A model generated the notes under the pieces. That model worked only from the letters and a program-made list of their open reading frames with translations, ran no database searches and was not told the origin of the DNA. 64,000 nucleotides of DNA, from contig OZ037767.1 in the NCBI GenBank assembly GCA_964035545.1, positions 1,437,680-1,501,679 on the forward strand, in the 5' to 3' direction. The position numbers and the translations under genes are program-made. This document shows positions 89 to 6,000 of the stretch, in pieces (the first letter of the stretch is position 1; the number at the start of each line of letters is the position of its first letter). The DNA is from Bugula neritina (taxonomy: Eukaryota > Animalia > Bryozoa).

Positions 89-3000
89 CTAAAACATACA
101 GGAAATAGTAAAATTAAGTTATTCAAAACACAAAACTAAAGTACAAAAAACACCTTTATTATAACGTGACTCGCCTGGTGATTCATTGTAGAGTTTGGCA
201 AATCATGCGTCTGCTGAGACAAACTAGCTCCGTCTGCAACTTCAATAGCCTCATCTGCATTAGCAGACGTCTGCTCAGACTGAGAAAATGTTCCGGAAAC
301 ATCCTCCAAACTGGTAGGTTCACCAAGGCCAGACGGGGTTGTATAAGACTCAGGAGGGGGTAGGCAGTGGATTCTTTCATCCACCACTTGGGTTTGGGGT
401 TCTCCCATCATCATAGCCAATATCCATTTGAAGAATGTGCTGATGAAAATTGAAATTTATAAAACTAATAACTAATTGACTGTAATTTAATAATAGTAAG
501 GCTTTTAGATTCAAGAGATACCTTTATAAATAGAGCACTTTCAAGTTACTAACCAATCAATACAGCGGATAATAAAAATATAAAATAAAAACTTACCAAA
601 TTATAGTGAAGATGAGTTTCAATATAAACACAGTTGATTTTTTCACAACTTGAAGTAGGGCCATCAACAACTGCGTGAATGTCATGGAGCGTAGAGTTGA
701 AACACCGTGTTTAATATTGGTGACGGTTAGTAAGCCAAGGGCAAACCATAGGCCCGCCCACATGGTAGAGATGCAAGTTTTTGTGCCTTCCCACACAAGG
801 CCGCTGAAATGCACAGGAAATCTGAATTAGTAAAAGTTGAGAGAAATATGTGAGATAACTTTGAGTAGGCTGTTGGGTAGAATAGTGAAAACTAGTTACG
901 AAGATGTCAAAATATATGCAAAAAGAAACAGTTACGGGAAGAAAAGAAAACTATGTGGTGCAATGAAGTCTGTTGACCAATCAGAATGAGAGAATCAAAA
1001 GTTGTCTTTTCAACAACTGAATTAGTGTATAATCAAAGCTTTTTATAGGTGAAGGTAAATTTGGTTTAATAAAAATCAGAGAGTTGAGAAATTATAACAG
1101 TTAAATGTATTGAAATAGAAGCAAGGTGTGTATAATCATCATAAATACCTGTTATTTTTAAAGCTGAAAAACACAAATAACTGCATTACCAAGTAATCAT
1201 CAATACTGCCATTTTCAACAGGTGCAAAAGTTACGAAATCAAAAAAACCTACATGACAAAATAAGTGTTTTAAAGCCTGTAGGCTAGCTTACATATGCTG
1301 CTTTTATCCGGCAACCCACAATAAACATAAAGTACAACATAATATAACATACACAGTAGATATTTGTTCCGTATATCCAGCCTGAGCTCTCAATGCTTTA
1401 GCATGTGCCATACGCAGATCTTGTTCCTCAGCACTGATACTAGTAGCGTGCTGCATCTATCAGAATAACACAAGTGGGTAACTATCAGATACACTGTTAT
1501 ATTCAATGTAATACGTCATGTCAAATAAATTTGTCATTTCAAAAAGATTTAAATAAACTACACAACCAAGCCGTAGCAAATGGCTGATAAAACAAGCAAT
1601 AAATTAAGTTTTGCAAATTCCAACCTCAAATATTGTGTCTTCACAGAAACCAACAAATGATTCAATCTTCTCGTTATCTCCCTCTTCGTTGACGATGTTG
1701 TGAAGGAAGTAACGTTTAGATTCCTGTATAACACAACATATACAATGTAGAGAGTAACATATACATATACAATGTAGAGAGTAACATATACATATACAAT
1801 GTAGAGTGTAACATATACATATACAATGTAGAGAGTAACATATACATATACAATGTAGAGAGTAACATATACATATACAATGTAGAGTGTAACATATACA
1901 ATGTAGAGAGTAACATATACATATACAATACTGAGCGTACACTAGTTTATACTCACTTTGATTTGTGGTTTCTCCCACTGATTGATATGGCTCTGTGTAA
2001 TCTCAAAATAAACTCTTTCTATTCTCCCGGCTGACCCCATAATTTCTATTCTACCCAAATATGGCTCAAAGTAGTCCAGCACTGACTTGGCTTTCTCCAA
2101 GAACCTTTCCAGCCTACAGAATGAGTGACACTCAAGTCTAAACAATTTCTCTACCACCAATGTAATAATAGCTCACCTGGGGTCACCAGCTGGGTTTAAT
2201 AACAGCTCACCTGGGGCTACTAGCTGGGTATAGCAACAGCTCACCTGGGGCCACCAGCTGGGTTTAGTAATAGCTCACCTGGGGTCACCAGCTGGGTATA
2301 GCAACAGCTCACCTGGGGTCATTGGGCATATGCTCGGCCAGATTTGTGAGAAGCAGAGCGACGTTGAATCCAATGTCTTTGGCCGGATTGTGGAAACGCT
2401 CCGTGAACTCAAGGAAGTCTACTTTACCGTCTTTATTGGCGTCAACACACATCATGATGTAGTCAATTTCCTCTCTGTTGATAATTATATAATATAATAA
2501 ATTACTTTGGAACTTTCATTATATTACATTTTAGACAAAGTTTAATTTAGCCAAAGCATTTGATGTTGACATTATTATAAACAACTATTATTATTACATT
2601 TGTAACATTAAATGAGAAGTAGAGAATAGAGAAAAATATCCAAATCAATAAAAAAACAATCAGTACATTACAATATATCACCTAGTAATGTTGTCATTTC
2701 TGTGTTAAAATAAAGTGCAAAAAGTATAATAGACTATACAGTTGAAAAGTAATAGTATATACTAGATATACATAAACTACTGACAATATCGATATCTGTT
2801 GTACAGAACATGCAGTAGTAAAGCGACGTGAATTACAATATCCAAGAAGTAGACATCTTAAAAGATATATTTTGTTCAAGAGTTGGTGAGATTAAAACTC
2901 CTTCACAAAAGAAAGATGCTAATTCGAGAAAAGTCATCAAATATTCGCATATATAATCTAAATTCCAAATGACACTCCACATTAATTGTGGAAAGACAAC

Positions 3001-6000
3001 TTCTAAACCAAACAAAACATTCTATAAAATGTTTGAACAGATTTTACAGCCAACTCGAGAAAGGTGCCCAGAAAAGTATGAGCTACACAACGTCGTGGTT
3101 ATAAAATAAAAACACTGATTTCAAATAAAAGTTGCTTTGCACGTACAAGTAATATGCTTGCCCATGCAGTAGTGAAGCGTGATAGCACTGTGGCTGTGCT
3201 AAGAGATGAGAAGAGAGAACAGAAGAGATAAAAAGTGTAGAGTGTAGAGACAACCTTCAATGTACTGGTTTAGAAAAACATTCAAAACATCTGACTTTTT
3301 AAATTTGGTAATCATTCAGCATGTAGTCTTGAATAAGATGAATCGAACTGTAGCTAGCAATAAATGGAGTTACAGAATTACATTAAATAAAATATATTTG
3401 AATATCAACATCACAATAATATATATTTATGTATGGGGGCAAAGCAGATTGGGGACTCCTTGGAGCACACTGTAACCAGGGAGGTATGCACAGGTATCAC
3501 TCTAACCTTATGTTCAAAGTGATTACAAATTAACTTTTTACTTAATGACACGGAGAAAACTCTAATATTGTGGAGACAACAAGAGAGGTGAAGGGATGAA
3601 ATTAGGGAAAGGAAAGCTTAGGGGATGTAAGCTGACAGACATGGTGAATAGCCCCACGTGCAGTGCTTTCTTACTCTGAGTAAACTTTCATGGAGGCCAT
3701 AGCCTCACGGAATTCCTTGTGCGAGACGTTACCGTCGCCATTTTGGTCGATGGCCTGTGATAAATACAATGAAAGACATTATTTAGACTGTACAAACCGT
3801 GCATACAACTTCTGGTGATACATGGCAATGCGGAATTCCTTGGGGGAAATGTATCCATCTTTGTTTAAATCATACTCCTGAAACACGGTGAACAAGAGGG
3901 AACGATTCTCAATGCTGAATAAACGCGTATTTTATTTTATGTCAACACAAAACCAAAAATACATTTCAACAATGAATAAAGCTCCAATGACAGAAAGGGG
4001 AAACAACTCCAAGTTGGTGGACATGTTGTATAATATGACTACAATTACCAGGAAAGCTTCAGAAGTTGTCATATCCTTCATTTTAAGGAATATATCAAAG
4101 AACTTGAGGATCATCTCAAAGTTAGCAGACGACTCTACCAGCGTGTCAACCATCTGTTTGCCGATGGGACCATTCATCACATTTCCTGTAAAACAACCAG
4201 AATCAACTTGAAATGCTGAACATCTATATAGGATTGCTTAAAATGATGATTTAAAATACAGAGAGCAAAGCATGTTTCAACACAGACACTGTTATTTTCC
4301 TACCTTCCAGCATAGAGAGCAGCATTATCATCATTTCCTTCTGCAGATTCATGAATTCTCTCAACAGCTCCAACTGCTCGGGATCTCTCGACAGTTTGTC
4401 TTGCATGTGTGCGAAGATGAACAGAAAACCTCCGACAGCGTCCCAGAGACGGCTGTGCGCCAGAGTCAGCTGATTTCCTTGACACGGGCCCTGTAACAGA
4501 CAGAGATGTTCGCAAATAATTATTATTGTACTACAAATGTTTGTAAAAAAAGTTCAAAAGTTAGTAGCCGATATTTGAATGAATTCATAACAAAATGAAA
4601 TGCACGTTGGTGTAAACATAGCATTACAAACCCAAATTGGTAAAACACACACCTGGATGTAGAATACACACCTGGATGTAGAACACACACCTGGATGTAC
4701 TCAGTGAGGGCAGCAAACAGCTGTTTGCCGACTTTAATAGCTCTGATGAAGTTTGCTTTGCCCGCCTCGTCGATGGTGTCTTTGCCGGAGTAGTGCCAGT
4801 AGAAGTCCATCATGGACTCCTGAATACGGAGGAGATAATCCACTGTGCTGATGATAAGGTTGACTGTTGTGTTATTCCCTACTTGTGTTCGCAGATAGTT
4901 CTGCCAGTCTAGAGAATACAGAAATAGACTTGGAGATAGAAAATTAATATAATGTGATTTGACAGAAAGTAAAAGTAAAACATAAAAAGTAAAATATGGA
5001 AATGAAATATGAAAATATAAAAATAGAATATAGAAAAAACATGCAATGTTAAAAATAACCTGAAAAATTATAAAGATGTAATTTTTAATTACAATAAAAA
5101 TCTCACATTTTATTGATGCATAACTTTTCATGGGATTAACTTTAAAATAACAGAAATACAAAAAATCTTTTTTCTAAAAACAGATCAAGTGAAAATAAAA
5201 GTCAACAACAATGCTGTAACAGATGCTCCTAAGCAACGGCCTTCAACTTACTAGCATTATGACCTTCACACAGCAGCTGTAGAAACCTGAACAATTTACA
5301 CGTGAAGTCAGCATCTTGGAGGTTTTCCCCGGAGTTGCTAGATGACCCGTCAACACTGACTACACCAAGACTTTCCGCTTTGTTTGTTCTTTCAAATGCA
5401 TCAAGGTCAAGGACACTGTAACAACGTATTTAGGTCAACGACTTTCATGTTGTATAACCTAACCTTCATACTGTGTAACCTAACCTTCATACTGTGCAAC
5501 CTAACATTCATACTGTACAACCTAACCTGCGTACTGTATAACCTAACCTGAATACTGTGTAACCTAACCTGCACTGTTGCATGAAGCCAGACATGGCAAT
5601 GAAGAAGCCTACGTCTTTCTTTTCCTGCAAATGTTCCAGCATGTTCTGTTGGACATCAGCGTTACCTCCCAACAGCAAGGCTATGCCACAGTCAATAGTG
5701 TGAGACACCATAGGACCAGGCACTCCCTGCAACCCACACCAACACATTATATAAGACTCTACGGAGTGAAGTGAACAGCATTTAGAGCATCACAAGAGAA
5801 AGGTCAAAGGTTAAAGGTAGAGTAACGATACCTTAGACGCACTGATGTAGAGCAGCAGCATCTCAGAGGCAGCGCGGTTTGCCAGTCTACCTTGCTCAAA
5901 CAGCAGCTTCTGTTTTTGCATTTCTTGCTCCTAGAGAAGAAACCACAACAACCAACTATACATCCTCGTTAAAGTTACAAGGCTAGGTAAACTGTGCACA

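What the first reader, a model, noticed from the sequence alone, without database searches (positions are those of the whole stretch)
3675..3877. Mutually exclusive duplicated exons swap EF-hand 1 of the ryanodine receptor
Seen: two paralogous exons, each exactly 80 nt and phase 0/2, encode [26 protein letters not shown] and [26 protein letters not shown]. Only 43 nt separate them (3755-3797), with a branch-like ctaaat about 12 nt from the upstream donor. Including both or neither shifts the frame. Knowledge: a donor this close to the next branch point is the classic steric mechanism of mutually exclusive splicing. The RyR EF-hand pair contacts the neighbouring S2-S3 loop and has been implicated in Ca2+ regulation. 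Inference: one gene makes two channel isoforms with different Ca2+/Mg2+ sensing, possibly tissue-specific (TGCATG motifs lie downstream at 3163 and 2809). I cannot tell whether this pair has already been reported in this lineage.
Basis: partly seen in the sequence, partly recalled or inferred. Interest (0 to 1): 0.85.

Follow-up and report, generated by a model that had tools for sequence, protein, structure and literature searches.

The report
Swappable calcium-sensor exons in ryanodine receptor
This animal's single gene for the main calcium-release channel carries two interchangeable copies of the exon for one calcium-binding loop, uses both in RNA, and shares the arrangement with molluscs, a lamp shell and a ribbon worm, so one gene probably makes two channels that differ in how high calcium or magnesium shuts them off.

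Summary
Confirmed. Two 80-nt exons (3877-3798, 3754-3675, minus strand, 43 nt apart) in the genome's only ryanodine receptor gene each encode the loop and exiting helix of EF-hand 1. Contigs from four independent studies show all four exclusive junctions and no A-to-B or skipping joint. Both exons are under purifying selection against two relatives (pN/pS 0.08-0.37). The duplication is not peculiar to this lineage: RefSeq isoform models swap the same segment in bivalves, gastropods, cephalopods and a nemertean; genomic DNA shows two copies in Biomphalaria, three in Lingula, four in an unnamed animal. The very short spacer (43, 64, 74 nt) occurs only in this lineage (probably bryozoans), so steric exclusion is plausible here but is not the general mechanism; a weak-donor-first, strong-donor-last pattern is conserved everywhere. 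Both copies keep identical calcium ligands, so any functional difference is tuning, and it is inferred, not shown. The Rbfox claim is unsupported by counts. I found no paper on this splice (known insect pair is in SPRY2), though database models already contain it. The scan had no earlier RyR note but lists many similar exon pairs in this genome.

The parts
4049..4184 (-). Constant upstream exon; encodes the entering helix of EF-hand 1, ends in phase 0
   Evidence: joints 4049>3877 and 4049>3754
3798..3877 (-). Alternative exon A (first copy), 80 nt, EF1 loop and exiting helix; non-consensus donor GTTTGT; junction codon gives Arg
3755..3797 (-). 43-nt spacer, shorter than any other intron mapped in the gene (minimum 100 nt); in-frame TAA if retained
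3675..3754 (-). Alternative exon B (last copy), 80 nt, EF1 loop and exiting helix; consensus donor GTAAGA; junction codon gives Glu
2475..3674 (-). 1200-nt intron below the pair; covered by contigs in runs X1 and X3 while neighbouring introns are not (slow or regulated removal, inferred)
   Evidence: tables 2 and 8
3163..3179 (-). First copy of a 17-nt intronic repeat ending in TGCATG; candidate splicing element, function untested
2809..2825 (-). Second copy of the 17-nt repeat (16/17 identical)
2313..2474 (-). Constant downstream exon; encodes EF-hand 2 and the following helix

Best explanation
A tandemly duplicated exon pair is spliced mutually exclusively, so the single RyR gene yields two channel subunits that differ in 13 of 26 residues across the EF1 loop and exiting helix (rabbit RyR1 4079-4104). 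Shown: both junction paths exist in RNA; both exons are conserved; the arrangement recurs across lophotrochozoans. Inferred: in this lineage the 43-nt spacer is too short to be spliced, which enforces exclusion sterically; choice between copies rests on a weak upstream donor competing with a strong downstream donor, and in long-spacer species double inclusion is removed by frameshift and decay. Inferred: both versions still bind Ca2+/Mg2+ and differ in affinity or in coupling to the neighbouring S2-S3 loop, tuning the low-affinity inactivation of the channel, a role that vertebrates fill with paralogue-specific EF1 sequences.
For: Four junctions and two 139-nt bubble contigs in each of four studies, no A-B or skip joint. 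pN/pS 0.08-0.15 for A and 0.18-0.37 for B with synonymous sites near saturation. A and B differ from the read strains at 1 of 158 nt against about 40 of 860 nt in flanking exons, Fisher p 0.014. Two EF1 variants with identical flanks in RefSeq isoforms of Ostrea, Magallana, Haliotis, Gigantopelta, Pomacea, Biomphalaria, Mytilus, Mercenaria, Octopus and Lineus, three in Ruditapes. Genomic tandem copies in L002, L003, L020, L023, L056, L057, L065, L066. Last copy has GTRAG in 9 of 9 loci, earlier copies in 0 of 12. EF1 scrambling or exchange alters Ca2+ inactivation of RyR1 (PMC11096358, PMC12119028); K4101 matters for inhibition (PMC10832476).
Against: Loop ligands at positions 1, 3, 5, 9, 12 are the same (D, N, D, S, E) in A and B, and the K4101 equivalent is kept in both. 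The R4736 partner on the S2-S3 loop is a Glu in the closest full-length relative, so the mammalian contact map transfers only partly. Contigs drop rare forms, so absence of other joints is not proof. No tissue data. EF-hands were reported dispensable for cytosolic activation of RyR2 (cited in PMC8301844).
Confidence: 0.62

Rival explanations
1. The splice is real but the swap tunes protein contacts (calmodulin-dependent regulation, packing against EF2 or the neighbouring subunit), not ion affinity.
For: Ion ligands are invariant while loop positions 2, 4, 6, 7, 10 and the exiting helix differ; EF-hand motifs are reported to contribute to isoform-specific calmodulin regulation (cited in PMC8301844); PMC12119028 argues that RyR1/RyR2 differences lie in coupling rather than binding.
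Against: Non-ligand loop residues are known to set EF-hand affinity (own knowledge); no binding data either way.
Confidence: 0.22
2. The two exons are functionally near-equivalent; the pair persists because each is expressed in some cells and so stays under ordinary purifying selection.
For: Across phyla first and last copies do not form distinct sequence classes (mean identity to mollusc Arg-type versus other type differs by at most 1.5 of 26 residues); clitellate-like loci, Macrostomum and Rotaria have one copy; this genome has very many such pairs.
Against: Within this lineage A and B keep distinct signatures in three species (21-22/26 to own type, 11-13/26 to the other); both are used at comparable contig depth; donor asymmetry is conserved.
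Confidence: 0.13
3. One copy is a decayed duplicate or the pair is an assembly or allelic artefact.
For: B evolves faster than A in protein.
Against: Both are spliced in four studies, intact in two relatives, and in tandem on one contig in many species.
Confidence: 0.02

Closest known systems
Insect RyR mutually exclusive exons in SPRY2 (PMC6026295, PMC3989282)
   Same: Same gene, single-copy in invertebrates, diversified by a tandem exclusive exon pair; tissue and stage regulation shown there.
   Different: Different domain (residues about 1135-1165, not the EF-hand); no duplicated SPRY2 exon was detected in this window.
C. elegans unc-68 isoforms (PMC7644089)
   Same: One RyR gene making tissue-enriched isoforms.
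   Different: Alternative promoters and optional exons in divergent region 2; no EF-hand swap mentioned.
CaV2.1 exon 37a/37b and alpha-actinin EF-hand exclusive exons (own knowledge; papers surfaced)
   Same: Exclusive exons that swap part of an EF-hand and alter Ca2+ regulation.
   Different: Different proteins; alpha-actinin uses a distant branch point, for which I found no sign here.
Steric mutually exclusive exons, donor to branch point under 50 nt (PMC5740500)
   Same: The 43-nt spacer meets the criterion whatever branch site is used; relatives have candidate branch A at 38 nt.
   Different: Threshold is from human data; orthologous pairs in molluscs, Lingula and others do not meet it.
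Vertebrate RyR1/RyR2 EF1 differences (PMC12119028, PMC10832476, PMC11096358)
   Same: EF1 sequence varies between channel types and affects Ca2+/Mg2+ inhibition.
   Different: Achieved by separate genes; vertebrate loops are degenerate, whereas both copies here have canonical ligands.

Membership tests
Tandem-duplicated mutually exclusive exons | Adjacent homologous exons of like length and phase with intact splice sites | tested here: met
Tandem-duplicated mutually exclusive exons | Each exon joined to both flanking exons in RNA | tested here: met
   four joints in four studies
Tandem-duplicated mutually exclusive exons | No transcripts with both or neither | tested here: inconclusive
   one search lists none, but only contigs were available and these drop rare forms
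Tandem-duplicated mutually exclusive exons | Both copies under purifying selection in relatives | tested here: met
   pN/pS 0.08-0.37
Steric-interference class | Donor to branch point under about 50 nt; spacer below the minimal intron size | tested here: met
   43-nt spacer; shortest other intron 100 nt of 56; branch point itself not mapped
Steric-interference class | Same constraint in orthologous pairs | tested here: not met
   279-1073 nt spacers with AG-free zones of 1-81 nt outside this lineage
Docking-site/RNA-pairing class | Conserved complementary intronic elements | tested here: inconclusive
   no shared inverted repeat or intronic match in window, L056, L058; relatives' introns only partly held
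Rbfox-regulated exon | Enriched, conserved TGCATG near the exon | tested here: inconclusive
   2 in 1200 nt, P about 0.10; they sit in a 17-nt repeat; none in 904 nt of L056, one in L057
Ryanodine receptor | Homology to solved RyR chains and RyR domain order along the gene | tested here: met
Canonical Ca2+-binding EF-hand | D/N/D/S/E ligands and Gly at loop position 6 | tested here: met
Canonical Ca2+-binding EF-hand | Measured ion binding and isoform difference | not testable with these tools
   needs titration and channel assays

The most novel reading that the evidence does not exclude
One duplication early in lophotrochozoan history created a splice switch in RyR EF-hand 1 that sets the Ca2+/Mg2+ inactivation threshold by cell type (for example muscle versus neuron), was expanded to three or four choices in some lineages, and stands in for the RyR1/RyR2/RyR3 gene split of vertebrates; the natural variants would test the disputed role of EF1 as the inhibitory ion site.
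Probability: 0.3. Interest if true: 0.72.

Novelty: new member of a known kind. Interest (0 to 1): 0.5.

Why it matters
Whether the RyR EF-hand pair is the low-affinity inhibitory Ca2+/Mg2+ site is still argued from mutants and low-resolution maps. Here animals across several phyla keep two to four natural versions of exactly that loop in one gene, which gives ready-made variant pairs for binding and gating tests. It also shows a second, apparently undescribed way in which invertebrates diversify their single RyR, and a case where the means of exclusion seems to have changed between lineages while the switch was kept.

Tried and rejected
Intron retention as a read-through form with two EF1 loops: A+spacer+B keeps the frame in the window and L056 but has an in-frame stop in all three species. 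Distant branch points in long-spacer species: no long AG-free zones. Conserved RNA pairing or intronic blocks: none found. Rbfox enrichment: not significant. Single origin of the pair: a tree of 27 columns is unresolved (4 of 42 branches supported; the junction column was left in, which biases the Arg-junction clustering), so orthology across phyla rests only on position, junction Arg and donor pattern. Other duplicated exons in this gene: none besides the RyR repeats. Naming the organism by COX1: no named hit. Eight paper searches found no description of an EF-hand splice in RyR; PMC5657546 was not held. Contig look-ups failed for Mytilus, Anneissia and P0170.

Full report
Observation. The window holds most of one ryanodine receptor gene on the minus strand, from about 53.9 kb to beyond the window's start. 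The exon at 2474-2313 matches solved RyR chains (E 2e-16) and has one match in the 216-Mb, 321-contig assembly. Exons A (3877-3798) and B (3754-3675) are 80 nt each, flanked by AG and GT, 43 nt apart. Either alone keeps the frame between 4049 and 2474; both or neither run into stops. They share 13 of 26 residues and each passes the Pfam EF-hand_1 cut-off. By the ungapped match of a close relative to rabbit RyR1 they cover residues 4079-4104: the end of the entering helix, the 12-residue loop and the exiting helix of EF-hand 1.

Expression. Contigs of four public runs from four studies were laid on 1900-5000. The tool marks them as RNA by guess, but they skip every GT-AG intron, so they are spliced transcripts. 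Each run shows the joints 4049>3877, 3798>2474, 4049>3754 and 3675>2474; the listed A and B paths are separate short bubble contigs. No A>B joint and no skip is listed. Contig depths for A/B are 431/388, 31/27, 5/13 and 24/15; these are rough, but show that neither form is marginal and hint that the ratio varies. Contigs cannot exclude rare forms and carry no tissue labels. The animals sequenced differ from the assembly at about 40 of 860 nt in flanking exons but at 1 of 158 nt in A plus B (Fisher p 0.014), as is typical of regulated exons (own knowledge). The intron below B is covered by contigs in two runs while neighbouring introns are empty.

Close relatives. A metagenome scan gave two independent loci with the same fused upstream exon and the same pair: L056 (spacer 64 nt) and L057/L058 (74 nt). 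A matches their first copies at 21-22 of 26 residues and their second at 11-12; B matches their second copies at 18-19.

Wider distribution. RefSeq isoform models show two EF1 segments between identical flanks in Ostrea, Magallana, Mytilus, Mercenaria, Haliotis, Gigantopelta, Pomacea, Biomphalaria, Octopus and the nemertean Lineus, and three in Ruditapes. Genomic DNA shows two tandem copies in Biomphalaria pfeifferi (1073 nt apart), three in Lingula (639 and 783 nt), two in L065 and L066, and four in L020. One copy was seen in Macrostomum, Rotaria, a set of JGI loci that look like clitellate annelids, and one variant only among the listed isoforms of Schistosoma, Trichinella, Folsomia, Ptychodera and Antedon. 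So the pair is widespread among lophotrochozoans and was not seen outside them. Whether it arose once is not settled: the tree of these 27 residues is unresolved and copies do not sort into two classes across phyla. For a shared origin speak the identical exon borders, an Arg junction codon on an upstream copy in this lineage, molluscs, Lingula and L020/L023, and the donor pattern below.

How exclusion works. The spacer is 43 nt; the shortest of 56 other introns mapped in this gene is 100 nt. There is no YTRAY in it, but any branch point 18 or more nt from the acceptor lies within 25 nt of the donor, well under the 50-nt criterion used for human genes (PMC5740500). In the two relatives the best branch candidate is 38 nt from the donor. 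Steric exclusion is therefore likely in this lineage. It cannot hold for the species with 279-1073 nt spacers, which have AG-free zones of only 1-81 nt; there, the 80-nt length makes double inclusion a frameshift, and decay plus regulation is the likely safeguard (inference). What all share is a donor asymmetry: the last copy has GTRAG in 9 of 9 loci, earlier copies in 0 of 12, against 28 of 55 for other introns of the window's gene (loci are not fully independent). I infer that the last copy is the default and upstream copies need activation. The two TGCATG motifs are not above chance in number, yet they end a 17-nt repeat that is identical in both copies in run X1 and lies in the least variable part of the intron; this is a lead only.

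What the swap may do. In mammalian RyR1 the EF-hand domain moves toward the S2-S3 loop of the next subunit at high Ca2+ or Mg2+, scrambling EF1 weakens inactivation (PMC11096358), exchanging EF1 between RyR1 and RyR2 changes inhibition (PMC12119028), and K4101 mutants raise the IC50 (PMC10832476). Here both copies keep D, N, D, S, E at the ligand positions and the K4101 equivalent; the D4730 partner is kept as Glu, but the R4736 partner is a Glu in the closest full-length relative. Differences fall on non-ligand loop positions (aromatic versus small polar at position 7, Pro/Gln versus His/Thr at 10), the first residue (Glu versus Ala/Thr) and the exiting helix. The likeliest effect is a graded change in ion affinity or in coupling to the gate, not an on/off switch. 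Nothing here measures it.

Organism. Not named by the tools. The protein is closest to lophotrochozoan RyRs; earlier notes of this scan call the genome a bryozoan, probably Bugula neritina, which fits the genome size and the symbiont-metagenome runs (own knowledge); my COX1 check returned no named hit.

Novelty. Tandem exclusive exons in ion channels are a known kind, and RyR has a described pair in insects, but in SPRY2 (PMC6026295, PMC3989282). I found no paper on an EF-hand pair in the searchable library, which lacks most subscription journals. The isoforms are already present, unremarked, in automatic RefSeq models of molluscs and Lineus. The scan lists many other exon pairs in this genome, including EF-hand ones in PDCD6 and nucleobindin, so the device is common here. 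Verdict: real, expressed, old, apparently undescribed; new member of a known kind; interest 0.5.

Noticed in passing
window 3179-3163 and 2825-2809 (minus): 17-nt direct repeat ending in TGCATG, 16/17 identical; in run X1 the one mismatch is absent, and no difference is listed over 3123-3224 although the rest of the intron differs by about 4-9%.
   Followed up: partly
window about 3235-3188 (minus): Long polypyrimidine tract followed by three AGs inside the intron below B, acceptor-like; no joint using it was seen in four runs.
   Followed up: partly
window 3674-2475: This intron is covered by contigs in runs X1 and X3 while adjacent introns have no depth, suggesting slow or regulated removal.
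   Followed up: no
P0229-P0245, P0268, P0475: Decapod crustacean and Folsomia RyR isoform models swap the segment just upstream of EF1 (the entering helix), a second, apparently independent exclusive splice at the same domain.
   Followed up: no
L020:4078-5484 and L002:46039-47700: Four tandem EF1 exon copies in an unnamed metagenome animal and three in Lingula; the third Lingula copy lies beyond the annotated gene end.
   Followed up: partly
L003, L020, L065, L066, first 60 nt after the first copy: UG-rich runs such as TCTGTGTC follow the upstream copy in several long-spacer species, resembling CELF-type binding sites; not tested statistically.
   Followed up: no
G000 C321, C6, C214, C73, C4, C17: Several COX1 matches: a mitochondrial contig, a near-identical copy inside large contig C6, other divergent copies, and a stop-free copy on C17 that may be bacterial or from another organism.
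   Followed up: no
window 52400-51800, 43650-43100, 28550-27400, 18700-18000, 2000-1600: Several RyR introns are filled by minisatellite-like tandem arrays that give long spurious open frames.
   Followed up: no
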